From Schmidtea polychroa (taxonomy: Eukaryota), in the NCBI GenBank assembly GCA_044892525.1, contig CM097885.1, forward strand, positions 177,506,001 through 177,570,000: 64,000 nt of DNA. Reading direction: 5' to 3'. This document shows, in pieces, positions 3,194 through 20,951 of this stretch. The stretch's first letter is position 1; each line of letters opens with the position of its first letter. The position numbers were made by a program, and so were the translations under genes. The notes under the pieces are model-generated. The model saw only the letters and a program-made list of their open reading frames with translations. It did no database searches and had not been told where the DNA came from.

Positions 3194-6100
3194 ATGACGA
3201 ATGTCGTAAAAACCGACGAGTATAAAGAGAAGTTCAGAGGAGAACCGTTCAACGGAAATGCAAACAAGCTAGCAACGTTCATAACTAATTTTGAAGTTTA
3301 TATCACTGTGTGTGGATGGACACCCGAAGCAATTAGTAAAAGGATGCCGTTGTTTTTGTGCGATAGCGCATTAGAGGTATATTTAGAAGCTAAAGAGAGA
3401 GATACGAAATTAGAGAAGTGGGAAGATATTAAAACATTCCTGAAGAAAACCTTCGGAGCCAGTAAGCCAATCAACCAGGCGTTGGGCGAACTAGCAAATA
3501 GGAAACAAAGGGCAAATGAATCCATTACGTTATATGCCAGCGAATTGCGGAGATTGGCAAAGAAAGCAATGAATGGAAAATTACCCGAAGAAAATCTGAT
3601 CGGTTATTTCATAGAGGGATTACGCCGAGAAGAAGTAAGAGCCTCAGTAGGTTGTCAAATGTGCAAAACATTAGAGGAAGCCATAGATTGGGCTACAAGA
3701 TGCGAGCTCCACCTTCCAGCTCAAATGAATATTATGCAAGAGGAGGGAAGGATAGCGACAGCAATAGCGAAAGCGGATAACGGAGATAACAACAATCAAG
3801 AACCGAAAATGAATCAATTTATACCAGGAGCGCACCAAATTTTCAAACCACCACAAGGACGATCAAATGGGAATAATGGTAATCGTAACAACCCGAATAA
3901 TGAGAACAATTTCAATAATCGACGAAATATGAACGATAACAAGCAGTGCCGAACATGCGGTAAACCAGGACACTGGGACAGAGATTGCTATAGAAATTCA
4001 AATTGTAATCGTTGTGGACGGCGTGGACATACCGAAAATGTATGCCAATTGAGAGGTTGTTTTAACTGTGGTCAGCCAGGTCACATCTCCAGAGATTGCC
4101 GAGAAAGGGGCCAACAACAACGACCACCACAGCGAAATAATAATTATATAGCGAATCCGCAACGACAAAGTAACCCTAACGAAGGAAAACAAATGAACGT
4201 TATGCAGGAAATTTCGCAGATGAAACAGATGATGCAACAAATGATGAGACCAAGACAAGAATCAGCACCACAACAAACCCAGAATATACGTATGATGAGG
4301 AGTACCGAAAATCTCAACAATTATGAAGTGCATCAACATGTACAAGAATGGCAAAGGCTACAGGCCGAGGAAGAGAGGATAAAACAAGAACGCAACCAAC
4401 AACGACAAGAACAACCATTGCGAATAAATATGATGAAGTTAGTAAAAGACATGAAGAGCCAGTATTGCTACAATTACGGGAAAAACCCAAGGGTAGTACC
4501 CATGACTGAACCAGAAAAGGTAAAAGAAACAACAACGGAAATGAAAACAGAGAATTCAACCACGATTTTAAAAGGAAACCAGAGAATTCAGAAAATATTC
4601 TGGAAAAAGATAAAAGATAAAATCGAAAAAGAACATAATAAAGCGAAAACCGAGACAGAAGATGAAAATAACAAGAGCAAGGAACAAACCAGTCAACTAA
4701 ACCACCAAATGCTACAAGAATCAGAATCAGAAGAAACAACAATATTCGAAAGAAAGAAACTAAAGAGAGTACCAAGGATGAGAAACTTGCAAATCAATAT
4801 GATGAAAAGGACAAAAGATGTAGCATCGTCAGACGAAGAAGAAGACTATGTAAGTAGTTTGGGTGGAGAAATACTACAGCTGAATGAAATAAGCGAACCT
4901 CCAAAAGGGGAAATCAAAGAGGAAGAAAGCGAAAACGAGATAACCAGTGAAAGTGAAGACGAAGATATCGAAATAAAGTTGAGAAAAGCAAGGGAGGAAG
5001 CGATAAAACAGGTAGCCGAAATACTCCCAGTAGTAGTGAGGAACCAAGAGTTCATCGACGTAATACCATTCAGGCGATTCGTGCAAAAAGTGATGAAATT
5101 GGAAAGAAACGAGAAAGATCTAATACCAAACGAGGAAAAATCAATTATAAAAAAGTATATGGAAAAAATGAAGCAGGCCGATACCACGCGGTATGTAATA
5201 AAAATTGGAACGAGTAGAGGACTTGAAAGAATGTGGATAAAAAATACAGTCACCGACGAACTTTTCGATTGGATACGAGAACATTTGGGAAGTTCGAGAA
5301 AGAAAGAATATCTGTATCAATACCAAGGAGAACAGATCAAACCAGATATGCACTTAGTAGATGCACTGATATGGCCAGGAGAAACGCAAATACTGAAGTT
5401 GCATAAAGAAAAACAACCAGCCAACCTTTACGATTGGGCTAAAGATGCCAAGGCAGAATATGATTTTAATATCAAATTGAAATTAGAACAAATAAAACAA
5501 TGTACTCTGAGACGAAACCTGGATAAGCTGATCAAACAAATTCAAGAACAAGTAGAAGACAACTGGGATTTACTCATCACCAGACGAGCCCCAGCCATGT
5601 ACGAACTAATGAGCCGATTGCGAGATACAGAAATGCTCCGGATGAGTGATTGGAGAACCATAAATTTGATCCACAAATATGGAAGGTTAAAAGAAACCCA
5701 GCCACAGAGGTTGGAAATAACCATATGGTTACCGAACGAAGAGAAACGACGAATAAAAATGAGCAATCAGAGTACAGTAGATGACTTGGTATCAAAAATA
5801 AACCAAGAGATAACGGAAAAGGTACGTAGCGAAAGTAGTGATGGTATGGTGGATGATGTAGTCATGATGTACGATAAAATAATATTACGAGCGGAGGACG
5901 ACACCTCGTTAAGCGAAATGGGTATGTGGGACAATCATCAGATAATCAGGATAGTACCAATGGATGAATTCCGAACAAGAGATGTAACCTATCAAAAAGA
6001 AATACGAGACCGGATGAAAACGTTATATCAAAAATCTACAGAAATAATTGAAATCCACCAACAATGGTTAAAAGAAAAGGAGCTACAAGGAAAAATCACG

Positions 6101-9100
6101 AAATTAAATACCAGATCCTGCAGACGAACCCCATGGGAAAGAGTGTGGAATGCAGAAAATAAGGAATGGGAAATCCGGAAAGGGATCTTCGTAGAAACAG
6201 ACATTGGTGAGACAGAAAGTGAATCGGAGGAAGAAGCAGAGGAACCTCCAGAATATGAAGAGGAAGCAAGGGAGCAGACATCAGATGACGAAGGCGAGAC
6301 GGATGTCACATCAGAAAGCGAAAATGAAGCGAGACATATTCACGCAATGAGGAAAAAGGAACGTGAATATGCTGATATGGACGGCGAGGAAGCAATAGAA
6401 GCAAGAGAGCGAGAAGAGAAAGAAAGATATAAACAATTAGGCGATATTTTAGCAATGGGAGCGAAAAATCAAAAACGCCAGGTAGTAGCGTTGGCTAATA
6501 TCATCTTAAAAACATCAGAGAATATCCACAATCTGAGAGGAATGGCAAAGGCAATAGAGGAATACCGGCAATATAATGAATGGTATCCAGAACAGCTAGA
6601 ACAAATTATTCGAAAATGGAGAAATCAGGAATGGGCACAAGACACTCAGGAGAGGTATCACATCCGAATCAAGTATCCGGACAAGAGCATCGAGGAACTA
6701 GAGGTACATCCAACAACAAAAATTAGAGAATTAAAAAAGAAATTAGCATATGAAACTCCATTCCATCTGCAACTATTCGGAAAATCACTAGACGATAATG
6801 CAGACGTCGGGATAACACCCATGAGATTGGAAGAGACAAATGTATTAACAATGGCAGAAACGTTGGGGAAACCGTTAAAAAGGAAAAGTAAAATTACTAA
6901 ACCAACAAAAGGCAGTTTGAGTACTCCAAGTCCGAACAAAGCACCAAGTAAATCTAATGAAACTGAAGAAGTTGAAGAGATAATCCTGGAAGATAGTGAC
7001 GATGAACCAGGAGAAAGATCACCGCTATTAGTGAGATGGCCGACAGGAGCCGAAATGTGGACTAATAACCAGCCATCAACGAGTTATCAACAACCAACGA
7101 AACTGAACATCAAAGAAATCATCGACAATACTACGGAAACCGAAACGGATGAACAATTCCAGAAGCAAAGAGAACCAACGAAAGTAACACCAGAAGGTCA
7201 AACCGATAAAATAATAGACGAATGGAATGAGTGGCTAAGAAATAACGATAGCTCATTACCCAGAACGGACAACGAAAGAAATCCGAATTACGAAAATACC
7301 AGAGAAGCCGGAACGATGATGGAAAAACGGGCAAAAGGAAGACCTAAGAAACAAGGAGAAAAGTCTGAGTTCAAAACCAAAGAACAATTAAAGCAAGAAC
7401 AAGGGCAAGTTCGATTAGAAAAATTGGATAAAATAGTATGGGATCTAAAGGAAGCCCAACCAACGATCGAAAGAGGAGAAAAATGGATACGTGAATTGTT
7501 AAAAGATATGTTAATAATAACAAACCCACAACTTAGACGTTTGTGGCAACGGAAAGTAGCCAGTACGGAAGCTAGACAATTATGGCACACCATTTCGGGG
7601 ATAATCCCAAAGTTAATCAAAGAGAAAACGAAAACCACCAAAACGGATTGGGACGAAACGAAGAGAGTGATTGAACAGCTCACGACAAATGCAAATGATG
7701 ACGAACATCATCTAGTGGTAATCACGTATTTGATGTATAATTTGATGGGACTAGCTGCGAGGAAAATACCAAATAAACAGTTTGCAAATCATGTGGAAAT
7801 GACCGTTTCAATCATAGAGAATACTATTGAACCACATATTATTCGTGCAGGAGGATGGAAAAGACTGATACAAGCGCCACGAAAAAATGAGCAAGAAAGG
7901 TCGATGCAAGTTAGATTGAAAAAACTGTTAAATGAACTAGAATGGGAACTACCGATGAAAGATCCCGCAAGCAGAAAAGCATCAATAAATTCGTTAATGA
8001 TGACTATGATGATATGGATGTTGTGCACAAGTGGAGCAACGGGTTTTACCATCTACGATTGTGATAATATGATAATGAGAGATAAATACTCATTGAGAGA
8101 CATAGAAGAATGCAGACAAGCCTCACCCAACAAATTGGACATCGTGAGAACAAAAGTTACTTACCATGTATATCAAGAATCAGATTTCATCAGAACGCAA
8201 GCAAGGGAATGCGTAGTATCAAAAAAGGTACTCGCATATTACTGTGGACAATATTCGTATTCGACTCTTATACTACCCGGTCTGGATAAAGAAATCGTAT
8301 CAATACAACGAGAGGACTGTAAAGAGCTATTTAGAACCGGAGCGCTAAAAATGCATAACGGAGTGACGATTCACGGACAAACTGGAATGATTAAAACCGA
8401 AAGTGTTTACGTATCCGGAAAAGTAAAATCATCAGATGGGTCATGTAACGGAGGTACGTATACGATCCGAGGCGAGGTAATATCGGGAGTTGTAGTGATC
8501 GAGTCTTATACGGTTGAATTAAAAGAATACGAAGCGCAATTTGACGCAAATAATTATCAAATGAAGACCAACCCAGCGTGTAAAGCTACAGAAAACGTAT
8601 GCAGGACAGGAGTATCAACTATAATCTATGAAGCTAATACCCAAAAATGCCGACTCCAAATGTTAAAAAGTGCTTTGTTCAATGAAGTAAAAGGAGAAAT
8701 TTATGAGAACGAGAACGACGAGGATGGAAACGACAGAGTGAGAATGCGAAATGGAAAACCAATGCCACCATCTCCCAGAGAAAAGAGACTTTCAACGCAG
8801 AAGACACCAACAGCATTAATCACAGACGATCCAGATCTAGGTATGAGATTTATCAAAGAGAAAGAAACCACCAAATGTGACAGTATAGTATATAAAACCA
8901 ATTACGCAGGTATCTACATGTCGAGACAAATAATCGATAGAGCAGTGGGAAAGATAGCAACGGAGGACGTAAAACTATACTTATATGCAAATAATAAAAT
9001 GGATTTTCTATTTCATCGTGGACAAACGACCTTGCAAAAAGTATATTACGATCTGATACAAAACGATTGTTCATTGAATAAAGAAATATTGAAAACAAAG

Positions 9101-12100
9101 CTAGCTATTGCGATAACGCACCCCGATAACACGATGCCATCACTCCCACTACCAGACGGACATTTTGGTAGAATGGTAGGAGAAGTGATGTACACATACC
9201 AGTGTACCAAGACGTATGCACGAATGCCAGAAAAATCCATACTACCCGAAAAGAGATGTGCAAATGAATTAGAAATTCGTTATAAAGGACAAAATCGATT
9301 CGTCCAACCAGTCACTAGAATCATGAATCCAGTGGGTTTCTACCCAAATCTCTTTAACTGTTCTAATGCATACGGACCTTTGTATGAAAGACCCGATGGG
9401 AAATGGATGATGTTACCGGGAAAAACCATATCCGAGGAACCCAAGAAATTTGGATTAATAGAACTCGCCACAGAGCTGGATTTCAAACCTATAGACGTGT
9501 CAAACGGTGGTATGTATTCCCCAGAAGATCTAGAAACAGCACGACTTAACGTACTCTTCCCAGCCAGACGAGAATCCATTTTGTCTAATATGGTAACAAT
9601 AACTGGGGGCACAAACTATCAATCAGGCCCGAATTACGAGCTGCTATTATCGCCAGACCATTTTCAACAAGCTACGTCAAACATGATGAAAGCAATGTGG
9701 GGAAGATTCTTAGTTTTTGGACAAATGATGGCCGGGATATTAGGGATCATACTCATAATTCAGATAGTTAGAGTAATACTAACACAAATGTTAGCTTGTT
9801 TCGATATATACAAGCGGGAAAAGAAAGTTAACTGGAAAATGATAGTAGGTTTCTTACCATTTTTAGCTAAAACCATGGTATTACATGGCCACTCAAAAGA
9901 CATTCATCGGATAAAGCGATTGATTAAAGTATTAACAAAGATTAAAGGAACCGACGAAGAAGTAGGCAGACGATTCCGGAAAGTAATGTACGATGAAGCA
10001 ACAAGACGACAATTGAAAAAGAATAAGCCAAAATTCTTGGACCGATTTAGAAGCCAATCATCTAACAGCGATAGTGACGACGATGATAACGGGAACGATA
10101 AATGTCTTTATCCAAACAGAAACCCAAACGAAAAACCATTGGAAACGGCACCATATTGGGAAAAGGAAAAGACAAACACCTGGATCGCCAATGGAAGCTA
10201 TATACCACCGGATATCGTGGGACCACAAGCAGCTTTGACCATGACACAAAATATGTATCCGCAATTACCGAGTCAACCCGGTATGCATTATATGCCGACA
10301 CGACGTACCAAAAGTGTAGATCAAGCAGATGACGTAAGAACAATCGCAGCGATGAGTCTACCTGGAGGTCCAGCAGTAACAGTCATGATCCAAATCAATG
10401 GTAAAGAAACCAATGCTATGATAGACACAGGAGCTAATGTATCAGCGATAGCGATTAATCAAATCCCCAGTAAACACTGGAAAGATATCGAATCAACAAC
10501 AATTCACATCATAGCATGTAGTAAAGAAACAGTGGACGTGGTCGGAAGATGGTGGACTACATTGAGATACCAGGACAACGAAATTGAAACGTATTTGGCA
10601 GTAATACCAAAACTTAGCGTACCATGCATAATCGGAACGGACCTGATGCCAGAATTATTAAAAGAAGTCGTAATAGACTTAACAACTATGTGTTTAAAAG
10701 ACAAAACCGGTAGAATATGCAAAATGAATGCAGTAATCAGATGTCCAGAAAAAATAATAGTACCAGCAAAATCGCAGATGATTTGTCAGATAAAAGTGGA
10801 TACGGGTATGGAAGGAGAAGTTATCTTTGAACCCAGCAAGTCATTCGAAAAGCGACGAGAGTTACCACTCGCAAGGGAAATAATAACAATAAACCAAGAA
10901 GGAGTGATACCGCTCAACATCACGAATTTCGAAGAAGAAGACAAAATCATTTATGAGAACGAAAAATTGGGAAGATTGACCCCAATGATGGACATAGAAT
11001 TACCGAAAGTGACCAACGAGATGATCAAAGATGATGAATTATGGACAATAGATAGTATGTTGTTGACGAATGATGAAAAGAAAAAATTGCACCGATTGTT
11101 GGTGGAATATAAAGATATATTCGCCATCTCAGATTTAGATTTGGGTACATGCGATGTTACCCTACATGCAATACCCCTCATAGATGAAGCTCCAATTGCA
11201 TTAAGACCATACAAGCTAGCAGAAATGCAAAAAGAAATAGCCGAAGCAGAAGTACAAAAGATGCTGGACGCAAAAGTAATCGAACCGAGTTGCTCACCTT
11301 GGCAATTCCCAGTGGTCATGGTAAAAAAGAAAGATGGCACCCAACGATTCTGTATCGATTATCGGAAGTTAAACGCAGTAACCAAGAGAGATACCTATCC
11401 ATTGCCGGACATCAATGAGATGTTATTGATGTTGCAAGGGGCAGCATATTTTACTTCTTTAGATCTAAAAAGTGGATACTGGCAGATTAAAGTCAAAGAT
11501 GAGGACAAGGAGAAAACAGCTTTCACGTTGGGACGAGATCTATATCAATTCAGGAAAATGCCATTCGGACTGACCAACGCACCAGCATCATTTCAACGGT
11601 GTATGAACTTTGTCACTCATGGAATCAAACAATGTATGGTATATATTGATGATTTACTAATCTATTCAGCGACATTTGAACAACATCTGGAAGATATCCG
11701 AAACGTATTTATTAGATTAAGACAGTGGAAACTCAAACTCAAACCATCAAAATGCGATTGGGCAAAGGAAAAAGTCACGTTTTTGGGACACATAGTGTCA
11801 GCTAAAGGAAAGGAGCCAGATCCAAGAAACATTGAGAAAATAAAAACATGTCCAGCACCGAAAACGGTCACCCAAGTTCAGGAATTTCTAGGATTATGCG
11901 GATACTATCGCAAATTTATCAAAAATTATGCAGGAATTGCAAAACCAATCCAGGAATTAGTAAAGAAGGACATTTCGTTCATTTGGGGGAAGGAACAACA
12001 AGAGGCGTTTGAAACGCTGAGAGACAAACTAATCGAAGCACCTATCCTAGTACACCCAGATTTTAAGAAGCCATTTCTATTGGCAACGGATGCAAGCGGG

Positions 12101-12976
12101 TACGCGGCAGGCGCGATTCTGGGACAATTAGACGATGAAGGAAAAGAGAGAGTAATCGGGTATTACAGCCGAACATTCAAAAAGCACGAGAAGAACTATT
12201 CGGTAACGGAACGGGAAGCATTGGCTATAATACAAGCTATCAAACACTTCCGATATTTACTATGGGGACATGAGATATGTATAACCACAGATCATCAACC
12301 ATTGGTGTGGTTAGGGCAACATAAAGAAGCGTCCAGTAGGCTGATGAGATGGGCCATGCAATTGCAAGAATACTCCCCATTTATAAAATTCAAAGCGGGA
12401 AGAGCAAATGCCAACGCCGATTGTATGTCAAGATTTATTTTTCCAGAGTTGGTGGATTCCGAAATGCAACGCATATGCTTAATAGTAGCGGAAGATTTGG
12501 ATTTCTGTCAATTGCGAAAAGACCAACAAGAGGACGCGGAATTAAAACAAATTATCGATTATGTAAAAACCGGAAAGACAGATGTATATGCGAAAGACCA
12601 AAAATTAAAAGAACATATGGATAAACACCGACACCGATATATTATAGAGAAAGATTGGTTGCTGATAATGGATGGGGAAAAACGATTAATGTGTATACCG
12701 GAAAACCGACGAAAAGAGTTACTAACGCAATATCACGATGGGAGATTGGGAGGACATATGTCATCGAAAAAGACGTTAGCAAGAATGAAACAGAAATATT
12801 TTTGGCCTACGTTAACTGAAGATGTAACCGAATGGGTAAAAAAATTGTCTAACTTGTGCAACCAGGAAGAATACTGGATCGAAATGGAAAGCACCTTTAA
12901 CGCCAATGCCAGTACCAATAGAACCAATGACAATGATATCCATGGACGTAGTTGGTCCACTACCAGAGTCAGATAA
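3194..12976 (+). CDS. Polyprotein part 1: Gag - UBL x3 - Bcl-2-like - envelope glycoprotein - protease - RT - RNase H - integrase N-terminus
   Basis: 3,260-aa ORF with the motifs listed in the sub-features. The frame is also open for 115 codons upstream of the ATG (2849-3193). Confidence 0.95.
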   Translation: MTNVVKTDEYKEKFRGEPFNGNANKLATFITNFEVYITVCGWTPEAISKRMPLFLCDSALEVYLEAKERDTKLEKWEDIKTFLKKTFGASKPINQALGELANRKQRANESITLYASELRRLAKKAMNGKLPEENLIGYFIEGLRREEVRASVGCQMCKTLEEAIDWATRCELHLPAQMNIMQEEGRIATAIAKADNGDNNNQEPKMNQFIPGAHQIFKPPQGRSNGNNGNRNNPNNENNFNNRRNMNDNKQCRTCGKPGHWDRDCYRNSNCNRCGRRGHTENVCQLRGCFNCGQPGHISRDCRERGQQQRPPQRNNNYIANPQRQSNPNEGKQMNVMQEISQMKQMMQQMMRPRQESAPQQTQNIRMMRSTENLNNYEVHQHVQEWQRLQAEEERIKQERNQQRQEQPLRINMMKLVKDMKSQYCYNYGKNPRVVPMTEPEKVKETTTEMKTENSTTILKGNQRIQKIFWKKIKDKIEKEHNKAKTETEDENNKSKEQTSQLNHQMLQESESEETTIFERKKLKRVPRMRNLQINMMKRTKDVASSDEEEDYVSSLGGEILQLNEISEPPKGEIKEEESENEITSESEDEDIEIKLRKAREEAIKQVAEILPVVVRNQEFIDVIPFRRFVQKVMKLERNEKDLIPNEEKSIIKKYMEKMKQADTTRYVIKIGTSRGLERMWIKNTVTDELFDWIREHLGSSRKKEYLYQYQGEQIKPDMHLVDALIWPGETQILKLHKEKQPANLYDWAKDAKAEYDFNIKLKLEQIKQCTLRRNLDKLIKQIQEQVEDNWDLLITRRAPAMYELMSRLRDTEMLRMSDWRTINLIHKYGRLKETQPQRLEITIWLPNEEKRRIKMSNQSTVDDLVSKINQEITEKVRSESSDGMVDDVVMMYDKIILRAEDDTSLSEMGMWDNHQIIRIVPMDEFRTRDVTYQKEIRDRMKTLYQKSTEIIEIHQQWLKEKELQGKITKLNTRSCRRTPWERVWNAENKEWEIRKGIFVETDIGETESESEEEAEEPPEYEEEAREQTSDDEGETDVTSESENEARHIHAMRKKEREYADMDGEEAIEAREREEKERYKQLGDILAMGAKNQKRQVVALANIILKTSENIHNLRGMAKAIEEYRQYNEWYPEQLEQIIRKWRNQEWAQDTQERYHIRIKYPDKSIEELEVHPTTKIRELKKKLAYETPFHLQLFGKSLDDNADVGITPMRLEETNVLTMAETLGKPLKRKSKITKPTKGSLSTPSPNKAPSKSNETEEVEEIILEDSDDEPGERSPLLVRWPTGAEMWTNNQPSTSYQQPTKLNIKEIIDNTTETETDEQFQKQREPTKVTPEGQTDKIIDEWNEWLRNNDSSLPRTDNERNPNYENTREAGTMMEKRAKGRPKKQGEKSEFKTKEQLKQEQGQVRLEKLDKIVWDLKEAQPTIERGEKWIRELLKDMLIITNPQLRRLWQRKVASTEARQLWHTISGIIPKLIKEKTKTTKTDWDETKRVIEQLTTNANDDEHHLVVITYLMYNLMGLAARKIPNKQFANHVEMTVSIIENTIEPHIIRAGGWKRLIQAPRKNEQERSMQVRLKKLLNELEWELPMKDPASRKASINSLMMTMMIWMLCTSGATGFTIYDCDNMIMRDKYSLRDIEECRQASPNKLDIVRTKVTYHVYQESDFIRTQARECVVSKKVLAYYCGQYSYSTLILPGLDKEIVSIQREDCKELFRTGALKMHNGVTIHGQTGMIKTESVYVSGKVKSSDGSCNGGTYTIRGEVISGVVVIESYTVELKEYEAQFDANNYQMKTNPACKATENVCRTGVSTIIYEANTQKCRLQMLKSALFNEVKGEIYENENDEDGNDRVRMRNGKPMPPSPREKRLSTQKTPTALITDDPDLGMRFIKEKETTKCDSIVYKTNYAGIYMSRQIIDRAVGKIATEDVKLYLYANNKMDFLFHRGQTTLQKVYYDLIQNDCSLNKEILKTKLAIAITHPDNTMPSLPLPDGHFGRMVGEVMYTYQCTKTYARMPEKSILPEKRCANELEIRYKGQNRFVQPVTRIMNPVGFYPNLFNCSNAYGPLYERPDGKWMMLPGKTISEEPKKFGLIELATELDFKPIDVSNGGMYSPEDLETARLNVLFPARRESILSNMVTITGGTNYQSGPNYELLLSPDHFQQATSNMMKAMWGRFLVFGQMMAGILGIILIIQIVRVILTQMLACFDIYKREKKVNWKMIVGFLPFLAKTMVLHGHSKDIHRIKRLIKVLTKIKGTDEEVGRRFRKVMYDEATRRQLKKNKPKFLDRFRSQSSNSDSDDDDNGNDKCLYPNRNPNEKPLETAPYWEKEKTNTWIANGSYIPPDIVGPQAALTMTQNMYPQLPSQPGMHYMPTRRTKSVDQADDVRTIAAMSLPGGPAVTVMIQINGKETNAMIDTGANVSAIAINQIPSKHWKDIESTTIHIIACSKETVDVVGRWWTTLRYQDNEIETYLAVIPKLSVPCIIGTDLMPELLKEVVIDLTTMCLKDKTGRICKMNAVIRCPEKIIVPAKSQMICQIKVDTGMEGEVIFEPSKSFEKRRELPLAREIITINQEGVIPLNITNFEEEDKIIYENEKLGRLTPMMDIELPKVTNEMIKDDELWTIDSMLLTNDEKKKLHRLLVEYKDIFAISDLDLGTCDVTLHAIPLIDEAPIALRPYKLAEMQKEIAEAEVQKMLDAKVIEPSCSPWQFPVVMVKKKDGTQRFCIDYRKLNAVTKRDTYPLPDINEMLLMLQGAAYFTSLDLKSGYWQIKVKDEDKEKTAFTLGRDLYQFRKMPFGLTNAPASFQRCMNFVTHGIKQCMVYIDDLLIYSATFEQHLEDIRNVFIRLRQWKLKLKPSKCDWAKEKVTFLGHIVSAKGKEPDPRNIEKIKTCPAPKTVTQVQEFLGLCGYYRKFIKNYAGIAKPIQELVKKDISFIWGKEQQEAFETLRDKLIEAPILVHPDFKKPFLLATDASGYAAGAILGQLDDEGKERVIGYYSRTFKKHEKNYSVTEREALAIIQAIKHFRYLLWGHEICITTDHQPLVWLGQHKEASSRLMRWAMQLQEYSPFIKFKAGRANANADCMSRFIFPELVDSEMQRICLIVAEDLDFCQLRKDQQEDAELKQIIDYVKTGKTDVYAKDQKLKEHMDKHRHRYIIEKDWLLIMDGEKRLMCIPENRRKELLTQYHDGRLGGHMSSKKTLARMKQKYFWPTLTEDVTEWVKKLSNLCNQEEYWIEMESTFNANASTNRTNDNDIHGRSWSTTRVR
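3947..4099 (+). other. Three CCHC nucleocapsid zinc knuckles of Gag
   Basis: CRTCGKPGHWDRDC, CNRCGRRGHTENVC, CFNCGQPGHISRDC (CX2CX4HX4C). Confidence 0.97.
5189..5404 (+). other. Ubiquitin/SUMO-like domain 1 within the polyprotein
   Basis: RYVIKI...LFDWIREHLG...YLYQYQGEQIKPDMHLVDALIWPGETQILKL resembles the SUMO-like F.F.G..I....T...L.M..GD.I pattern; no terminal GG. Confidence 0.55.
5708..5959 (+). other. Ubiquitin-like domain 2 within the polyprotein
   Basis: LEITIWLPNEEKRRIKMSNQSTVDDLVSKI...VVMMYDKIILRAEDDTSLSEMGMWDNHQIIRIV follows the beta-grasp pattern (TV..L..KI; DD.SL.E.G). Confidence 0.7.
6653..6853 (+). other. Ubiquitin-like domain 3 within the polyprotein
   Basis: IRIKYPDKSIEELEVHPTTKIRELKKKL...LQLFGKSLDD aligns by eye with ubiquitin LEVEPSDTIENVKAKI...LIFAGKQLED. 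Confidence 0.8.
7484..7873 (+). other. Bcl-2-like helical domain (clear BH2, degenerate BH1)
   Basis: IENTIEPHIIRAGGWKRL vs Bcl-xL LNDHLEPWIQENGGWDTF; upstream RVIEQLTTNANDDEHHLVVITYL occupies the position of TVVEELFRDGVNWGRIVAF but lacks NWGR. Confidence 0.72.
7982..9883 (+). other. Envelope-like glycoprotein of chuvirus / BEL-Pao env type (class III-like), in frame inside the polyprotein
   Basis: Signal-like SINSLMMTMMIWMLCTSGATG then FTIYDC..YSLRDIEEC, YYCG, DGSCNGG, REKR (8777-8788), GEVMYTYQC, CANELEI, FVQPVTRI, GGMYSPEDL; TM at 9707-9793; second hydrophobic stretch at 9833-9883. Family assignment is from recalled motif pattern, not a search. Confidence 0.8.
10370..10700 (+). other. Retroviral-type aspartic protease
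   Basis: AMIDTGANVS (D at 10424) and CIIGTDLM. Confidence 0.93.
11190..12440 (+). other. Reverse transcriptase and RNase H (Ty3/Gypsy)
   Basis: SPWQFPVVMVKKKDG, RFCIDYRKLN, DLKSGYWQI, MPFGLTNAPASFQR, YIDD at 11642, LATDASG, TDHQPL, NANADCMSR. Confidence 0.98.
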
Positions 12977-15900
12977 AGGAAATATTTACATTCTGGTGAT
13001 CACAGACTTTCTTACGAAATTTCCAGAAGCATTCGCGATGCCAGACCAAAAAGCTAAAACAATCGCAAAAATTTTGGTAGAAGAGATATGCTGCCGATAT
13101 GGAACACCAAAACAGATATTAACCGATCAGGGAACTAATTTTATGAGTGAAATAATGAGCGAAGTAACAAATTACTTCAAAATAGCAAAGCTAAGAACAT
13201 CTCCATACCACCCTCAAACCAATGGGATGACGGAAAGATTTAATGGAACACTTATACAAATGCTATCAAACTACGTCGATCGTCACCAACGAGATTGGGA
13301 CGAATATATAAACCTATGTCTTATGGCGTACAGAATGTCGATTCACGCATCAACGAAAATGAGCCCATTTAAATTAATGTACGGAAGAGAGTGCAACATG
13401 CCAATGGACCTGGAATACCAACCACCGATATCGCAGTATATGGAGATCGACGATTATGTTACGAAATTCAAGGAAAGAATGCAAGAAATTTGGGAAACTG
13501 CGGGATTGAATATCAAGTTCTACCAGGAAAGTTATAAAGATTTACACGATCGAAAGAAAAACGTGAAGCAACATACGTTTCAAACAGGTGATTGGGTAAT
13601 GATAGAAACCCCGGAATTAATTCCAGGAACCACAAAAAAGTTACAACGCAACGGAAAAGGACCATATGAGATCTTATTCGTAGGCGAAACCAATGTAAGA
13701 GTGAAATTGATAAATAATCCATTCACCAGGCCAATATACGTGAACGTGGCACGATGTAAATCAATTCCAAAAACCGCCACCAGTCAACCAGAAGGTCGAA
13801 CATTAACCACACGTTCGCAAACATACAGAATGAACATGATGCAACAACTCGCAGAACCGATCACCGGACGATTGGGTATCCAACCATCAGAAGCAGAAAA
13901 GATTGTAAAAGAGGTAAAAATTAAAATACCTGGATGGGCAAAAGATCGATTAGATTTCGAAATATTAGGAGGATTATTGACGATGATCGAAAATTATGCG
14001 AACAGAGAGAGGACACATCCGTTATTGCGAGTAGTCAAAAGCCAATGGCCAATATTATTTACAATAACAGATCATTACGGAGACACACCATTACACAAAC
14101 TCATGAAAGTAGGTAACAACGAGCAAATACTAGAAACAATAGAAGCATTTCACGACTGCAAGCGATCAACAGAACAAACAAACAACCAAGGTTACACACC
14201 ATTAATGATAGCAGCAAACAGAGAAAAAACCAAAGACATTATAACCGCATTACTTGATACTGGATCAAAAATAACTACACAAGACCACGAGCGGAAAAAT
14301 GCACTACATCATGCTATCGAAGGGAAAAGTACCGAGGCGTTCACGTCATTGATGGAACTACTATCATATGAGGACAATCGGGAAGTCGGAAACATGTATG
14401 ATGGATTGTTAACAGCGATCAAAGAAAAACTGACAACAATTACCGGAATATTAATTACATGGAGAAATCCAATTCAAAACGATTATATGATCAACGTAAA
14501 CGAAGCGTTCACGAGAGGAGAGAACACGCTGATGAGAGAAGCTATGAAAGGACATCATTTATTCGAAATTCCGAATCAATTACTAGAACGAGGGATAAAA
14601 TTCACAAATCATAAAGACGAACAGTTAGCAAAAAAGCGAATCGACACATTCGAAAAATCCCTATTCCAATTTACTAACCAAGCACGAAATAAATATTGGG
14701 AAACGGTAAGTGTGTTATATATGATGGACACAATGAATAACATCCGCGAGAATTACCTGGATATTATCCAAATACTTACAGCAGAGGAACGAATCAATAA
14801 TCCAAGCGGAAAGAAAACGAAAATAAGGTATGGGAAATCAAGGGAACCAAAATTGACAACGAACCAAAAGGTCACAAATAACGTCATCGAAACAAAATCA
14901 ATGAGTATAGATCAGGAGGCAATAATACGCAAAGCGAAAGAGGTATTCTTTGAGGAAATGCTAGAGTTGTCAGACGAAATAATATTGTCAAAAATAATAA
15001 AAGCTGTACATACATACGCAAGAGATCAAACCACGGGTTTAGATATTGGGAAAATCAAAACCTTCTTGCCTCGAGCATTTACGATGGTAACGAAGGATTC
15101 CAGAACACCCCTACAACAAGCAATACTAGCAGCAAAAGAAAATAGAGCAATAACGATCATGAGAATCCTTGGAGATATGGGCGAGGAAACCAACACGAAA
15201 AATGAACAAGGCGAAACCGCCATGATGTACGCAGCTATAACGAAAATACACCCAAAAACACTCCACATACTACATCAATCGGGATCGAGACTAGACGAAA
15301 GGTCCAATGAAGGAAATTCCACCTTGGACTGGGCAACCATACAGCCAAACTTAGAAATGATCAGATTCATTTGCAAAAATGCGACAAAAGAAGAAGTTGA
15401 AAATATATGCAAAAACACATCTCAATTTCAGTGGAATACGGTACGGAAAAATCTGGAAGCAATGAAATTATTAATAACATGGAGAATACCACAAAGTAAT
15501 AAATATGCGATAAATATAAACGAATTCTACGAAAACGGAGAAAACGCGATGGTAAAGAATACATTAACTAAAGGGGGGACACCAAAAATTATTTTAATAG
15601 TACTAAACAGAGAAGACCTCAAATTCACGCAAAATCAGAGCGAGCAACAAAGAATTGGGAAACATCGTCGCATTCAATTAAGAGAATTAGTCAAAGAATG
15701 GAATAGAAAGAGACACGCTGCAACGGGCAGAAAAGAGTTTGAATTCGAAGCAAAATTAGCAAGAAACAGAGTGCTAACAGCATATCGCAGATTATTGAAC
15801 GATATAAATGTCGAGGACGACATTTTAAACGACAGCGGGGGAGATAAACACGATGACAATAACGGAAAAGGCCGAAAGGAGGATAAAGAGAAAAGAGAAC

Positions 15901-17048
15901 CGGAGGAGGATAAACCGGAAAACAAGGATTCGGATACGAAAAGAGAGGGAAACAGCCCGGGAACTAAGACCAAAGAGGAGGAAAAACCGAATAATGGAAA
16001 ACAGAGGGTATGCCTACCTTTCACTAACAAAGAAATAGAGACAAATATGATATTAATGATAATTATGCTTACCATGATAGAGTTAGTAACAGCTCATGGA
16101 GGGACGAGAACGATAAAAGAAACCAAAGAAGCGGAGAATCAAGATAGCAATGAGGACGAACTAAAACAAGAAAAGAAAAAGCAAGCACAAGAGCAGCAGT
16201 GGGATTTAAAGGAAGAATGGGACTTAAAGGAAAGGTGCATACTAGGAAGATGCATGTCTAGAGCGTATCAGAAACTAGTACTGATAAATGAGGACACAGA
16301 ACCAATAACAGAAGTAAGAATACAAGAAGCATACCGAAATCGAGACGGGAAAAGAATAACGAACGTTAAAGGAAAAGAGGTACACCTAGGAAAAGGTGGC
16401 GAAGTAGTAATAACGCAGCTCCAACCAAGAAAAGAGCACAAAGTCTGTATTTCAAGATTAGGACCGGGTGAGAGATGCCATCAATATGTGACGCAGCAGC
16501 AGCCCCCGAAGGAATATACGGTTTGTATCTGGAGGAACGAATCAAAAAGAGAATGCCGACGATACCCGGGGAAAAGAGGAAAGAAAAGAAAAAACCACGA
16601 CGAAAAGGACGAAGGAGGAAAGCACAAGAAAACTGGCGAGGAAGCTCAGGACAACTATGTTTCGGAGGAAGAGATGGAAAAAATACAAAAGATGGCAAAG
16701 GAGGGTATGAACGAGGAAATAGCAAGAATACGAGAGATGATGAAAGGGAATGGCAAAAGAGGGAACGAGAAAAGTACAGAAGCAATATCAACATTAACAA
16801 ACAAGGAAAAACCAGAGAGTATAAGCGTGAAACAGATGATGTGGATCAGTGGGATAATAATAACAGGGGCATTCCTAATCATAACGGGGGGAACAATAAA
16901 AATAATTAAAGACAAACGACATCGCGGAGAACTAGAAATGACCCGAATCCGAAACTTCCAACATCGAGTGAAACGACCAAGTGATATCAAACAAGAACAG
17001 TGGGTGGAGGCCTGGAACGTTCAGCGCCCTCCAAACTCACGTATATAG
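12843..17048 (+). CDS. Polyprotein part 2: integrase (HHCC completion, DDE core, GPY) - ankyrin blocks - C-terminal signal/TM module
   Basis: Frame reads NCLTCATRK..MDVVGPLP..TDQGTNF..NGMTERFN..GPY. It joins part 1 if one A is removed from the 7-A run at 12838-12844, giving one 4,617-aa ORF (3194-17048). Confidence 0.92.
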   Translation, partial: NCLTCATRKNTGSKWKAPLTPMPVPIEPMTMISMDVVGPLPESDKGNIYILVITDFLTKFPEAFAMPDQKAKTIAKILVEEICCRYGTPKQILTDQGTNFMSEIMSEVTNYFKIAKLRTSPYHPQTNGMTERFNGTLIQMLSNYVDRHQRDWDEYINLCLMAYRMSIHASTKMSPFKLMYGRECNMPMDLEYQPPISQYMEIDDYVTKFKERMQEIWETAGLNIKFYQESYKDLHDRKKNVKQHTFQTGDWVMIETPELIPGTTKKLQRNGKGPYEILFVGETNVRVKLINNPFTRPIYVNVARCKSIPKTATSQPEGRTLTTRSQTYRMNMMQQLAEPITGRLGIQPSEAEKIVKEVKIKIPGWAKDRLDFEILGGLLTMIENYANRERTHPLLRVVKSQWPILFTITDHYGDTPLHKLMKVGNNEQILETIEAFHDCKRSTEQTNNQGYTPLMIAANREKTKDIITALLDTGSKITTQDHERKNALHHAIEGKSTEAFTSLMELLSYEDNREVGNMYDGLLTAIKEKLTTITGILITWRNPIQNDYMINVNEAFTRGENTLMREAMKGHHLFEIPNQLLERGIKFTNHKDEQLAKKRIDTFEKSLFQFTNQARNKYWETVSVLYMMDTMNNIRENYLDIIQILTAEERINNPSGKKTKIRYGKSREPKLTTNQKVTNNVIETKSMSIDQEAIIRKAKEVFFEEMLELSDEIILSKIIKAVHTYARDQTTGLDIGKIKTFLPRAFTMVTKDSRTPLQQAILAAKENRAITIMRILGDMGEETNTKNEQGETAMMYAAITKIHPKTLHILHQSGSRLDERSNEGNSTLDWATIQPNLEMIRFICKNATKEEVENICKNTSQFQWNTVRKNLEAMKLLITWRIPQSNKYAININEFYENGENAMVKNTLTKGGTPKIILIVLNREDLKFTQNQSEQQRIGKHRRIQLRELVKEWNRKRHAATGRKEFEFEAKLARNRVLTAYRRLLNDINVEDDILNDSGGDKHDDNNGKGRKEDKEKREPEEDKPENKDSDTKREGNSPGTKTKEEEKPNNGKQRVCLPFTNKEIETNMILMIIMLTMIELVTAHGGTRTIKETKEAENQDSNEDELKQEKKKQAQEQQWDLKEEWDLKERCILGRCMSRAYQKLVLINEDTEPITEVRIQEAYRNRDGKRITNVKGKEVHLGKGGEVVITQLQPRKEHKVCISRLGPGERCHQYVTQQQPPKEYTVCIWRNESKRECRRYPGKRGKKRKNHDEKDEGGKHKKTGEEAQDNYVSEEEMEKIQKMAKEGMNEEIARIREMMKGNGKRGNEKSTEAISTLTNKEKPESISVKQMMWISGIIITGAFLIITGGTIKIIKDKRHRGELEMTRIRNFQHRVKRPSDIKQEQWVEAWNVQRPPNSRI
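14070..14607 (+). other. Ankyrin-repeat block 1
   Basis: DHYGDTPLHKL, NNQGYTPLMIAA, DHERKNALHHAI, GENTLMREAM. Confidence 0.9.
15096..15629 (+). other. Ankyrin-repeat block 2 (internal duplicate of block 1)
   Basis: DSRTPLQQAI, NEQGETAMMYAA, SNEGNSTLDWA; tail LLITWRIPQSNKYAININEFYENGEN...KFT mirrors ILITWRNPIQNDYMINVNEAFTRGEN...KFT of block 1. Confidence 0.88.
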
Positions 17049-19242: not shown

Positions 19243-20298
19243 ATGACACAAGAGAGAATAACCGAAAATACGATAGCCCCAACCAATACCCACAAGACAC
19301 AAATTCCCAGAGAATATAACGAAAAATGGAACAAAGTAATGTTCCAACTAACTAACCTCACCCATAACTACATCGAAGAAGCTAGAGAAGATGAGAACAG
19401 TAAATATCAATGGCTAATCCACAATTTAAGAGAGGAAGCCGAAGCATGTAAAAGAGCATCAAAATGGGCATCATTAGAAAATACCCGCCAAGAAGCGCAC
19501 AGCCACTACTTAAAGCAGCTAGTGCAGGAAGCGAGAAAGAGACTTACCGATGAGAACACCAAGCGCGAAGCGGAAAAGCAAATAGAAGGAAGGAAAATGA
19601 TGCACTTAGTGGCAGAAGCGAGAAAATGGAAAAGACAAAACAGTGAAATGAAAAAAGAGATGAAAGAATTGCCCATGAGACTCGGATATGAAAGCGAACA
19701 AGGTAAATGGGAGGAGAATTTAATAATAAAGGAAGAATTGAAACGGTTGAGAAAGGTCGCCGCCCGAAGTCAAACCTGGCAAACAAAAGCTATGGAGTTT
19801 GAGCGACATTTGGCAATGAAATGCGACATAAGAGAGCACGAGAACGCCGCAATGGAAGAGATGATAACCCAACAAACAGGACGGATTGTGGAATTAGTAA
19901 ATCAGGTCGAAGAGATGAAAAGAGACCTTAATGGATTACAAGGATCGCTGGAACAAAGAAACATGGTCCTAGCGGGAAAAAATAAAAAATTAGAAAACGA
20001 GAGGAAAATGTATACCGAAAATATTAAAAACTTAGAAATAGAAATTGAAAAATGGAAGGGCGACGAGAAAATCAAGGCCCTAGACAAACAAATAGAGGCG
20101 AAAGACGAAGAGACAAGGTATCTCACCTATCTGCTCGACGAGGAATTGAACATCACTCGAGCTCTAAGAGACGAAATTAATGAATTGAGAGCTCAAATTC
20201 CCCAATATTACCTACCCTATGACCCTATTGCGATACAGTTGCATCCCGCGGTCGATAGTGATGAAGGTTATGTGGGACAGGAAGAAACCTTCGTATAA
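19243..20298 (+). CDS. Accessory ORF C: 351-aa coiled-coil protein ending in ETFV
   Basis: Long uninterrupted ORF, E/K/R-rich heptads, no recognisable catalytic motif. Confidence 0.75.
   Translation: MTQERITENTIAPTNTHKTQIPREYNEKWNKVMFQLTNLTHNYIEEAREDENSKYQWLIHNLREEAEACKRASKWASLENTRQEAHSHYLKQLVQEARKRLTDENTKREAEKQIEGRKMMHLVAEARKWKRQNSEMKKEMKELPMRLGYESEQGKWEENLIIKEELKRLRKVAARSQTWQTKAMEFERHLAMKCDIREHENAAMEEMITQQTGRIVELVNQVEEMKRDLNGLQGSLEQRNMVLAGKNKKLENERKMYTENIKNLEIEIEKWKGDEKIKALDKQIEAKDEETRYLTYLLDEELNITRALRDEINELRAQIPQYYLPYDPIAIQLHPAVDSDEGYVGQEETFV

Positions 20299-20920: not shown

Positions 20921-20951
<31 letters not shown>

What the first reader, a model, noticed from the sequence alone, without database searches (positions are those of the whole stretch)
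7982..9883. Chuvirus/BEL-Pao-type fusion glycoprotein fused in frame between Gag and protease of a Gypsy element
Seen: an internal signal-peptide-like segment, a Cys-rich ~550-aa ectodomain with an REKR furin-like site, then a TM, all in frame upstream of the protease. Known: env in LTR elements is normally a separate ORF3 after integrase; Gypsy errantiviruses use baculovirus F-type env; chuvirus-like or gB-like G is associated with BEL/Pao elements. Inference: an independent envelope capture. The polyprotein would be threaded through the ER like a flavi/alphavirus precursor, leaving Gag cytosolic, G lumenal and Pol tethered to the G tail. This could couple Pol packaging to budding membranes. 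The model needs the second hydrophobic stretch (9833-9883) not to cross the membrane.
Basis: partly seen in the sequence, partly recalled or inferred. Interest (0 to 1): 0.93.

Follow-up and report, generated by a model that had tools for sequence, protein, structure and literature searches.

The report
Envelope protein inside giant Gypsy polyprotein
A giant Gypsy-type endogenous retrovirus carries a herpes-gB/chuvirus-like membrane-fusion protein as an in-frame domain between Gag and protease; this is real, but the same arrangement was already published for the giant "Burro" retroelements of planarian flatworms.

Summary
Window 7982-9883 encodes a signal-like segment, a 14-cysteine ectodomain of about 550 aa, a membrane anchor and a second short hydrophobic stretch. 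It lies in one open frame with Gag upstream and PR-RT-RNase H-IN downstream. It matches Pfam PF24664 (Monjiviricetes fusion glycoprotein, E 7e-68). A confident AlphaFold model (pLDDT 86) matches chu-like virus glycoproteins (E 3e-38) and herpesvirus gB (E 3e-14), so it is a class III fusogen. Pol is Ty3/gypsy type (Ty3 Gag-Pol, E 4e-100).

The fusion is no accident: 15 long relatives at 25-40% identity also carry G inside such polyproteins. All 15 aligned keep the signal peptide and the single strong membrane anchor.

The arrangement is not new. Arkhipova and Yushenova (2019) described in-frame env between gag and pol in planarian Burro elements, and this element has a closely similar domain set. 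Chary and Hayashi (2026) describe GAG-ENV-POL gypsy elements with gB-type env in flatworms, nematodes and bryozoans.

The ER-threading topology is plausible and sequence-supported, but untested. The REKR site is not conserved. This copy has one frameshift in integrase, and no LTR pair lies in the window. Verdict: already known, modest interest.

The parts
3194..17048 (+). gag-env-pol polyprotein gene of a giant Ty3/gypsy element. It is broken by one frameshift, within the integrase-coding part, and has no in-frame stops.
   Evidence: ORF list and translation. In at least 8 relatives the integrase zinc-binding and core domains are continuous in one frame.
3347..3628 (+). Gag capsid-like domain (Retrotrans_gag)
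   Evidence: Pfam PF03732, E 2.1e-9
3947..4099 (+). Three CCHC zinc knuckles (nucleocapsid)
   Evidence: Pfam zf-CCHC; pattern scan
4100..7981 (+). About 1,290-aa linker between Gag and G. It carries weak ubiquitin-like hints (6656-6874) and a weak Bcl-2-like hint (7640-7858).
   Evidence: Pfam ubiquitin E 0.09 and Bcl-2 E 0.14, both below cut-off. PDB ubiquitin variants E 0.04. The AlphaFold model of 7451-8353 was too poor to use (pLDDT 51).
7982..8044 (+). Internal signal-peptide-like segment: polar or basic n-region, 12-residue h-region, small-residue c-region
   Evidence: An equivalent segment is present in all 15 aligned relatives, ending 2 residues before the conserved YDC.
8045..9706 (+). 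Ectodomain of a class III (chuvirus-type, gB-like) fusion glycoprotein
   Evidence: Pfam PF24664 E 6.9e-68. AlphaFold2 pLDDT 86. Foldseek: chu-like virus G E 2.8e-38 and TM up to 0.60; herpesvirus gB E 3.2e-14. 14 conserved Cys.
8777..8788 (+). REKR furin-like motif in a disordered loop; specific to this copy
   Evidence: The loop is model residues 248-270 with pLDDT below 50. The motif is absent from all 15 aligned relatives.
9707..9769 (+). Membrane anchor of G, followed by a conserved basic residue
   Evidence: Kyte-Doolittle 19-residue mean 2.53, and 1.8-2.5 in all relatives
9839..9883 (+). Second, short hydrophobic stretch in the G tail. Relatives carry a Cys-Cys-Pro motif here.
   Evidence: 19-residue mean is 1.0-1.57 where long enough to score (15 of 16), and the uncharged run is at most 10 residues in all 16. 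The stretch is also present in stand-alone G proteins.
10382..10657 (+). Retroviral-type aspartic protease
   Evidence: Pfam RVP E 2.6e-9
11321..12373 (+). Reverse transcriptase and RNase H
   Evidence: Pfam RVT_1 E 2.9e-35, RT_RNaseH E 4.4e-39. Best PDB match is Ty3 Gag-Pol 7q5b, E 3.8e-100.
12695..13265 (+). Integrase (H2C2 zinc-binding domain plus catalytic core); carries the one frameshift
   Evidence: Pfam Integrase_H2C2 E 3.2e-14 and rve E 5.3e-13; comparison with relatives
14118..15368 (+). Ankyrin repeats fused after integrase
   Evidence: Pfam Ank_2 E 9e-19
17654..19042 (+). Accessory ORF: TRAF-like protein (RING plus MATH domain)
   Evidence: Pfam TRAF-mep_MATH E 3.3e-26, below-cut-off match to RING zf-C3HC4 (E 6.7e-4, 19.9 bits against 21)
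19243..21884 (+). Three further accessory ORFs: two coiled-coil, and one small ORF with a signal-like start and one hydrophobic span
   Evidence: ORF list and translations. They share the A-rich strand bias of the element.

Best explanation
The window holds most of a giant Ty3/gypsy endogenous retrovirus of the Burro type: at least about 20 kb, with its left end beyond the window edge. Its envelope protein is a chuvirus-type class III fusion glycoprotein. It is not a separate gene but a domain of the Gag-Pol polyprotein.

Shown: the identity of the domains, their order and their shared frame, and the conservation of this layout in diverged relatives.

Inferred mechanism:
- Translation starts at Gag, and Gag plus a long linker are made in the cytosol.
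- The internal signal peptide then takes the ribosome to the ER.
- The G ectodomain is translocated, and signal peptidase cuts two residues before the conserved YDC.
- The single strong anchor stops transfer.
- The short second hydrophobic stretch stays at the cytosolic face of the membrane.
- PR, RT, RNase H and IN are made in the cytosol, tethered to the G tail until the element's protease releases them.

This yields Gag, G and Pol in equal amounts at one membrane site. That would let capsids acquire a fusogenic envelope.
For: Identity. Pfam PF24664 E 6.9e-68. AlphaFold2 pLDDT 86, with a 48-residue central helix and beta-rich domains. Foldseek hits to chu-like virus glycoproteins (E 2.8e-38) and herpesvirus gB (E 3.2e-14, probability 1.0). 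14 conserved cysteines. Pol is closest to Ty3, and Gag has three CCHC knuckles.

Layout under selection. No stop occurs in more than 3,000 codons. Gag, G and Pol share one ORF in P0006 and P0022. Gag and G share one in P0005, P0014 and P0021. G and Pol share one in P0001-P0004, P0011, P0016, P0019 and P0020, at 25-40% identity.

Topology. All 16 polyproteins have a hydrophobic segment of 11-15 residues with small residues at -3 and -1, two residues before YDC. A Met in front of it is not conserved, which speaks for an internal signal rather than a separate start. One strong anchor is present in all 16. The second stretch scores below the usual span threshold where it is long enough to score, and its uncharged run is at most 10 residues in all 16.

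Published match. Burro elements have Gag with 2-3 CCHC knuckles, ubiquitin-like and BCL2-like motifs, in-frame env, PR, RT, IN, ankyrin, MATH_TRAF and tandem repeats, in genomes above 70% A/T (PMC6431247; PMC11410931).
Against: No experiment bears on processing or topology. The hydrophobicity scans are crude and no dedicated signal or TM predictor was available. Equal amounts of Gag, G and Pol are unusual for retroelements. This copy has a Met 30 residues before the predicted cleavage site, so separate initiation on a subgenomic RNA is possible here. Five of 68 family members have a second stretch at or above the span threshold. Membership in Burro rests on the published domain description only: no Burro sequence could be compared, the host could not be identified, and no LTR pair lies in the window. 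This copy cannot itself be fully functional, because integrase carries one frameshift.
Confidence: 0.6

Rival explanations
1. G is made from its own subgenomic (cis- or trans-spliced) mRNA, as retroviral Env is. The signal peptide then works as an ordinary N-terminal one, and the shared frame with Gag only reflects compact coding.
For: This copy has a Met followed by basic residues 30 residues before the predicted cleavage site. The single-ORF gypsy element Cer1 produces an internal spliced mRNA (PMC10309623). In relatives P0003 and P0004 the called ORF starts upstream of G, separately from Gag.
Against: The Met is not conserved among the 15 aligned relatives. There is no stop after G, so such an RNA would still encode G-PR-RT-IN. 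Gag and G share one frame in at least 5 diverged lineages. No RNA data were available.
Confidence: 0.2
2. The G domain no longer acts as a fusogen. It is kept as a membrane-targeting or assembly module, or is simply decaying in this copy.
For: This copy already carries a frameshift in integrase. The G piece has only one N-glycosylation sequon. The Cys-Cys motif of the tail is replaced in this copy. Fusion loops were not examined.
Against: All 14 ectodomain cysteines and the whole fold are retained. There is no stop in more than 3,000 codons. Full-length G is conserved across relatives at 25-40% identity.
Confidence: 0.12
3. The juxtaposition is accidental: a chuvirus-derived endogenous viral element nested in a gypsy element, or an assembly artefact.
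For: Chuvirus glycoprotein insertions are common in arthropod genomes (PMC7642597 and PMC10084718, listed).
Against: G is in frame, with no stops. No other viral genes flank it. The same layout is found in 15 independent contigs from other assemblies.
Confidence: 0.02

Closest known systems
Burro giant gypsy-like LTR retrotransposons of planarians (GYPSM1 / Burro1-4; Jurka 2007; Grohme et al. 2018; Arkhipova and Yushenova 2019, PMC6431247)
   Same: A giant polyprotein starting with Retrotrans_gag plus three CCHC knuckles. Env lies in frame between gag and PR, with similarity to mononegavirus fusion glycoproteins. PR-RT-RH-IN follows, then ankyrin repeats. A MATH/TRAF module and coiled-coil (Smc-like) regions are present, as are tandem repeats. 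The genome is very A/T-rich. Weak ubiquitin-like and Bcl-2-like hints lie upstream of env, where the review places those motifs.
   Different: MATH/TRAF is a separate ORF downstream of pol here. In S. mediterranea Burro1 it lies inside ORF1, and in D. tigrina it is an upstream ORF. No BIR or dUTPase-like match was found. The polyprotein is somewhat shorter than the published 4,873-5,140 aa. No Burro sequence was available for direct comparison. The review likened env to gypsy (F-type) Env by HHpred, whereas the fold here is class III.
GAG-ENV-POL Ty3/gypsy 'errantiviruses' with HSV/gB-type env in Platyhelminthes, Nematoda and Bryozoa (Chary and Hayashi, eLife 2026, PMC13524379; Sacco et al. 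2022, cited there)
   Same: Ty3/gypsy pol. A class III gB-like env placed between gag and pol. A conserved cysteine-bridge architecture. Env diverges together with pol.
   Different: That paper treats env as an ORF. It never uses the words fused, in-frame, polyprotein or frameshift, and it does not mention planarian Burro. The elements described there are of ordinary size, with no TRAF or ankyrin cargo mentioned.
Glycoproteins of Jingchuvirales (chuviruses) and related Monjiviricetes; Pfam PF24664
   Same: Sequence family, fold and cysteine pattern. Signal, ectodomain and anchor, followed by a tail that holds a second semi-hydrophobic stretch.
   Different: The viral proteins are stand-alone, about 620-690 aa, and share only 17-28% identity. 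The nearest stand-alone relatives sit alone on contigs of about 2.4-2.6 kb. Here the protein is an internal domain of a retroelement polyprotein.
Mosquito BEL/Pao elements with chuvirus-like glycoprotein (Dezordi et al. 2020, PMC7642597)
   Same: An LTR retroelement that acquired a chuvirus-type G.
   Different: A different retroelement superfamily. According to the eLife paper's summary, the glycoprotein gene there sits next to pol. Here pol is Ty3-like, and no BEL/Pao Pfam families match.
Polyprotein processing of flavi-, pesti- and alphaviruses (established textbook knowledge)
   Same: By inference only: an internal signal sequence after a cytosolic capsid protein, signal-peptidase release of the glycoprotein, and downstream enzymes on the cytosolic side.
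   Different: No homology. Here about 1,600 residues precede the signal, and the downstream enzymes are retroelement PR, RT and IN. Nothing has been tested.

Membership tests
Class III viral fusion glycoprotein, chuvirus type (Pfam PF24664 Monjiviricetes_fusion) | Significant match to the family profile above the curated cut-off | tested here: met
   E 6.9e-68, 229.6 bits against a cut-off of 27
Class III viral fusion glycoprotein, chuvirus type (Pfam PF24664 Monjiviricetes_fusion) | Class III fold: beta-rich domains around a long central helix, like gB, G and GP64 | tested here: met
   AlphaFold2 pLDDT 86 with helix 332-379. Foldseek: 113 PDB hits at E<=1e-3 listed, and all 50 shown are herpesvirus gB (top E 3.2e-14, TM 0.36-0.40). 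In BFVD, chu-like virus G scores E 2.8e-38 with TM up to 0.60. Rhabdovirus-like G appears lower in the BFVD list. GP64 and VSV G did not appear among the rows shown.
Class III viral fusion glycoprotein, chuvirus type (Pfam PF24664 Monjiviricetes_fusion) | Conserved disulfide (cysteine) framework of the family | tested here: met
   All 14 ectodomain Cys lie in columns at least 90% conserved in 68 sequences
Class III viral fusion glycoprotein, chuvirus type (Pfam PF24664 Monjiviricetes_fusion) | Type I layout: signal peptide, ectodomain, one C-terminal anchor | tested here: met
   Hydrophobicity and alignment. The signal is internal to a polyprotein. No dedicated predictor was available.
Class III viral fusion glycoprotein, chuvirus type (Pfam PF24664 Monjiviricetes_fusion) | Hydrophobic bipartite fusion loops, trimer formation, membrane-fusion activity | not testable with these tools
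The activity assay is outside this report's remit.
Ty3/gypsy (Metaviridae) LTR retroelement | Pol domain order PR-RT-RNase H-IN, with RT closest to Ty3/gypsy | tested here: met
   Pfam order RVP, RVT_1, RT_RNaseH, Integrase_H2C2, rve. Best PDB hit is Ty3 Gag-Pol, E 3.8e-100.
Ty3/gypsy (Metaviridae) LTR retroelement | Gag with capsid-like domain and CCHC knuckles | tested here: met
   Retrotrans_gag plus three CCHC knuckles
Ty3/gypsy (Metaviridae) LTR retroelement | Flanking long terminal repeats, primer-binding site, polypurine tract | tested here: inconclusive
   No LTR pair around the element in the window. The window starts inside the element's 5' leader, so the 5' LTR is probably outside it. 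Relative L002 has 123-nt direct repeats 15.3 kb apart around its element. PBS and PPT were not examined.
Burro-type giant planarian gypsy element | Env in frame between gag and pol in a polyprotein of several thousand residues | tested here: met
   against the description in PMC6431247
Burro-type giant planarian gypsy element | Cargo domains: ankyrin, MATH/TRAF, coiled-coil; tandem repeats | tested here: met
   Ankyrin E 9e-19 and MATH E 3e-26, the latter as a separate downstream ORF. Coiled-coil ORFs. Tandem repeats at 11-751 and 1457-1900.
Burro-type giant planarian gypsy element | Ubiquitin/SUMO-like and BCL2-like motifs upstream of env; dUTPase-like domain between PR and RT; BIR | tested here: inconclusive
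   Ubiquitin E 0.09 and Bcl-2 E 0.14, both below cut-off. PDB ubiquitin variants E 0.04. The AlphaFold model of the Bcl-2-like region was unusable, and the PDB sequence search found nothing. No dUTPase or BIR match.
Burro-type giant planarian gypsy element | Sequence similarity to the Burro1-4 / GYPSM1 reference entries; planarian host | not testable with these tools
   No Burro sequence or host label was reachable. The window's proteins are not in the protein collection and Rfam gave nothing. The flanks have 24-30% G+C, which fits the above-70% A/T planarian genome.
BEL/Pao LTR retroelement | BEL/Pao-type protease and pol families | tested here: not met
   Only retroviral RVP and Ty3/gypsy-type RT_RNaseH and Integrase_H2C2 families match. 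Ty3 is the best PDB hit.

The most novel reading that the evidence does not exclude
In a whole, widespread lineage of gypsy endogenous retroviruses, the class III fusogen is delivered to the ER from inside the Gag-Pol polyprotein by a conserved internal signal peptide. This lineage would comprise planarian Burro elements plus at least 15 diverged relatives seen in environmental assemblies, down to a compact 2,146-aa Gag-G-Pol. After cleavage, the upstream Gag-linker part would be left anchored at the same membrane by the signal's hydrophobic core. If the weak Bcl-2-like hint is real, that core would mimic a tail anchor. Pol would be tethered by the G tail. That would be a flavivirus-like membrane-threaded expression strategy for a reverse-transcribing element, and the literature I could read has not set it out.
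Probability: 0.4. Interest if true: 0.55.

Novelty: already known. Interest (0 to 1): 0.3.

Why it matters
Envelope capture is the step that turns a retrotransposon into a retrovirus-like agent. Here the fusogen is a domain of the polyprotein rather than a separate gene. That is an unusual solution to the problem of co-delivering capsid, enzymes and envelope. The arrangement itself was reported in 2019 for planarian Burro elements, and in 2023/2026 for GAG-ENV-POL gypsy elements.

This re-analysis adds four things:
- a firm class III (chuvirus/gB) fold assignment;
- the finding that the internal signal peptide, the single anchor and the tail motif are conserved across diverged relatives;
- the finding that the furin-like site is not conserved;
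- a sequence-based argument that Pol stays cytosolic.

Published work describes Burro1 as abundant and active, controlled by PIWI in planarian somatic cells (PMC8532177). How its envelope is made is therefore a fair question for planarian biology, but not a new discovery.

Tried and rejected
- A word-indexed protein search with the G piece alone found nothing, because stand-alone relatives are too distant for shared 5-mers. The exhaustive search and the whole-polyprotein search did work.
- A PDB sequence search with G found nothing. Only fold comparison linked it to gB.
- LTR searches failed in three ways: the repeat finder on 30 kb and on 64 kb, and blastn of 1-3300 against 17-64 kb.
- Host identification failed: no Rfam hit, and the exact look-up of four window proteins found none in the collection. 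The formin gene was not searched further, because the protein tools return no organism names.
- For the Bcl-2-like region upstream of G, the alignment-based AlphaFold run gave pLDDT 51, so I did not fold-search it. PDB phmmer gave only chance-level hits.
- The dUTPase-like domain reported for Burro between PR and RT was not detected by Pfam or PDB.
- One search failed because I gave an out-of-frame range.
- Sacco et al. 2022 is not held and is cited only through the eLife paper. The eLife supplements are not held either.
- Rejected ideas: BEL/Pao carrier, a nested viral insertion, and a family-wide furin priming site.
- I noticed a four-residue tyrosine-proline motif in the tail-to-PR linker (10256-10267). 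I dropped it as a possible budding motif, because about 0.3 such matches per polyprotein are expected by chance on my own rough estimate.

Full report
**1. What is there**

A very long reading frame starts at 3194 on the + strand. Pfam places the following on it, in order:
- Retrotrans_gag, then CCHC zinc knuckles (three by pattern scan);
- after about 1,290 residues with no confident match, PF24664 'Monjiviricetes_fusion, viral fusion glycoprotein' (E 6.9e-68, 229.6 bits, cut-off 27);
- a retroviral aspartic protease, RVT_1, RT_RNaseH and the integrase H2C2 zinc-binding domain.

The integrase core, ankyrin repeats and two more hydrophobic segments follow in a second, overlapping frame that ends at 17048.

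From the Gag start to the end of RNase H there is no stop in more than 3,000 codons. Base composition predicts about 0.069 stops per codon.

- signal-like h-region 7991-8026 and c-region 8027-8044;
- conserved YDC at about 8054;
- an ectodomain of about 550 residues with 14 Cys;
- REKR at 8777-8788;
- a strong anchor at 9707-9769;
- a second hydrophobic stretch at 9839-9883.

**2. What the domain is**

An exhaustive phmmer search of 1.84 billion representatives found 1067 homologues. The best, at 33-41% identity, are long polyproteins. Next come proteins of about 620-690 aa at 20-28% identity.

I aligned the window piece with 67 relatives of stand-alone size. All 14 ectodomain cysteines lie in columns that are at least 90% conserved.

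AlphaFold2 on that alignment gave a confident model (mean pLDDT 86, pTM 0.63). It has beta-rich domains and a 48-residue central helix.

Foldseek against BFVD put chu-like and related negative-strand virus glycoproteins first: Soybean thrips chu-like virus 4 at E 2.8e-38, and Tacheng Tick Virus 4 with TM 0.60. Rhabdo-like, nyavirus and herpesvirus gB entries followed. Against the PDB, all 50 hits shown are herpesvirus gB structures (E 3.2e-14, probability 1.0), among 113 hits at E<=1e-3. A sequence-only PDB search found nothing.

**3. What carries it**

The pol region's best solved relative is the Ty3 Gag-Pol polyprotein (7q5b, E 3.8e-100). The Pfam families are the Ty3/gypsy set, and no BEL/Pao family matches. 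So the carrier is a gypsy element.

A strong A-over-T strand bias (AT skew 0.24-0.54) and 37-40% G+C run from about 2 kb to about 21.6 kb. The flanks have 24-30% G+C. The element therefore occupies at least about 20 kb.

Downstream of pol it carries a TRAF-like ORF (RING plus MATH, E 3.3e-26), two coiled-coil ORFs and a small membrane-protein-like ORF. Its 5' leader contains two tandem-repeat arrays.

No LTR pair lies in the window. The window begins inside the element, so the 5' LTR is presumably outside it.

Compared with at least 8 relatives in which integrase is continuous, this copy has one frameshift in the integrase-coding part and no other break in gag-env-pol.

**4. Is the in-frame fusion an accident?**

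It is not. A search with the whole polyprotein, scored on the G region, returned six proteins of 2,099-3,865 aa whose precomputed Pfam lists combine PF24664 with protease families. Five of them also list RT, RNase H and integrase families.

BLASTP of the window's two frames against all long hits shows three groups:
- Gag, G and Pol in one ORF in P0006 (3,865 aa) and P0022 (2,146 aa);
- Gag and G in one ORF in P0005, P0014 and P0021;
- G and Pol in one ORF in P0001-P0004, P0011, P0016, P0019 and P0020.

Identities are 24-37% in G and 24-41% in Pol. The relatives most diverged in Pol (P0019, P0020, P0022) are also the most diverged in G. This fits long co-divergence rather than recent capture.

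These relatives come from environmental assemblies. The P0001 cluster has 21 members, each listed with a contig on a contig of 15.8-16.9 kb in ENA assemblies. One relative (L002) has 123-nt direct repeats 15.3 kb apart around its element.

**5. Topology**

I aligned the G region, with flanks, of the window and 15 relatives.

- Every sequence has a hydrophobic stretch of 11-15 residues followed by small residues at -3 and -1, just before the conserved (A)YDC. This is a signal peptide with a signal-peptidase site.
- A Met in front of it is present in this copy but is not conserved. That argues for an internal signal rather than a separate start.
- The anchor has a Kyte-Doolittle 19-residue mean of 1.8-2.5 in all 16 sequences and is followed by a conserved Lys or Arg.
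- The second stretch scores 1.0-1.57 where it is long enough to score (15 of 16), never has more than 10 consecutive uncharged residues, and contains a conserved Pro. In most relatives it also has a Cys-Cys pair. By inference, this is a membrane-proximal tail motif of the kind that is often lipid-modified.
- The same two-part layout, followed by 40-95 further residues, is seen in the stand-alone G proteins. The second stretch is therefore an ancestral part of the G tail, not a new span. Five of 68 reach the span threshold, so sequence alone does not settle the matter.

The REKR motif lies in the only long low-confidence loop (model residues 248-270). That loop varies in length and sequence, and none of the 15 relatives has the motif. 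It is not a family feature.

**6. Comparison with what is known**

Arkhipova and Yushenova (Genome Biol Evol 2019, PMC6431247) describe the giant gypsy-like Burro elements of the planarians Schmidtea mediterranea and Dugesia tigrina. Their features are:
- ORF1 polyproteins of 4,873-5,140 aa;
- a start with Retrotrans_gag and three or two CCHC knuckles;
- MATH_TRAF, ubiquitin/SUMO-like and BCL2-like motifs;
- an env region 'between BCL2 and PR' with hits to mononegavirus fusion glycoproteins;
- PR, a dUTPase-like domain, RT, RH and IN;
- ankyrin, BIR and Smc motifs, tandem repeats, and accessory ORFs that can alternatively be polyprotein subdomains.

[quoted passage not shown]'

Chary and Hayashi (eLife 2026, preprint 2023; PMC13524379) report that gypsy 'errantiviruses' of Nematoda, Bryozoa and Platyhelminthes carry only HSV/gB-type env, arranged GAG-ENV-POL. 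They report that the chuvirus-like glycoprotein of mosquito BEL/Pao elements also sits next to gypsy pol in 114 arthropod elements. They cite Sacco et al. 2022 for nematode elements with env and pol in flipped order; I could not read that paper.

The window element matches the Burro description in Gag, the three knuckles, in-frame env, ankyrin, MATH/TRAF, coiled-coil ORFs, tandem repeats and A/T-rich surroundings. There are only weak hints of the ubiquitin-like motif (Pfam E 0.09; PDB E 0.04) and of the Bcl-2-like motif (Pfam E 0.14, immediately upstream of the signal peptide). No dUTPase or BIR match was found.

I could not compare it with a Burro sequence or identify the host. The assignment is therefore 'Burro-type, probably planarian', not proven identity.

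Neither paper, in the text I could search, discusses the signal peptide, the topology or the processing. The eLife text never uses the words fused, in-frame, polyprotein or frameshift.

**7. Verdict**

It is wrong about novelty and about the significance of REKR.

The feature is already known as a kind. The residual new content is a sequence-based topology argument, plus the breadth of fused relatives in environmental data. Interest 0.3.

None was entered in a tool, used as evidence or written in this report.

In my reasoning I also narrowed down where the integrase frameshift lies by comparing frame bounds. The ORF bounds printed by the ORF listing and copied into my first notebook entry bracket it as well. 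I have not repeated that place here, and I have deleted nothing.

Noticed in passing
window 17654-19042 (+): An intact 462-aa TRAF-like ORF inside the element, downstream of pol. It has a RING finger (weak Pfam matches, below cut-off) and a C-terminal MATH domain (Pfam E 3e-26). It looks like a captured host signalling or ubiquitination gene, as published for Burro elements.
   Followed up: partly
window 14118-15368 and 16032-16910 (+): Ankyrin repeats are fused in frame after integrase. At the end of the same frame there is a second pair of signal-like and anchor-like hydrophobic segments, with a Cys-containing stretch between them. This may be a second secretory module inside a polyprotein.
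   Followed up: partly
window 19243-21884 (+): Three more ORFs share the element's strand bias. Two are coiled-coil proteins of 351 and 256 aa. The third is a 219-aa ORF with a signal-like start and one hydrophobic span. None has a significant Pfam match.
   Followed up: partly
window 11-751 and 1457-1900: There are two tandem-repeat arrays in the 5' leader of the element, with periods of 24 nt and 74 nt.
   Followed up: no
window 6656-6874 and 7640-7858 (+): The Gag-G linker gives a weak ubiquitin-like hint (Pfam E 0.09; PDB ubiquitin variants E 0.04) and a weak Bcl-2-like hint (Pfam E 0.14). The Bcl-2-like hint ends about 40 residues before the signal peptide. If it is real, the signal's hydrophobic core could serve as its tail anchor after cleavage. 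The AlphaFold model was too poor to test this (pLDDT 51).
   Followed up: partly
window 48183-51951 (-) and 40540-43877 (-): Two ordinary, degenerate gypsy remnants lie here, with gag, PR, RT and IN fragments in short ORFs. The first is bracketed by direct repeats of about 270 nt at 97-98% identity, 3.5 kb apart.
   Followed up: no
window 31052-34051 (+): A host formin gene (GBD, FH3 and FH2 domains; FH2 E 2e-79) is encoded in a single 999-codon exon, in surroundings of about 25% G+C.
   Followed up: partly
window 24800-26000: A G+C-rich island (46-49%) lies just beyond the element. It holds a 199-aa ORF (24855-25454) with no Pfam match. An N run follows at 26438-26582.
   Followed up: no
L001 and the cluster of P0001: The P0001 cluster has 21 members, near-identical polyproteins of 3,744-3,771 aa. 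Each member listed with a contig sits on one of 15.8-16.9 kb in an ENA assembly. They are followed by accessory ORFs, one of which matches an RNase_T exonuclease. The uniform contig length suggests a complete unit, either a transcript or an element collapsed at its LTRs.
   Followed up: partly
L002 1-7000: Bacterial-type genes (MacB, ABC transporter, TetR fragments) lie directly upstream of the LTR element on this long-read metagenome contig. It may be a chimeric assembly.
   Followed up: no
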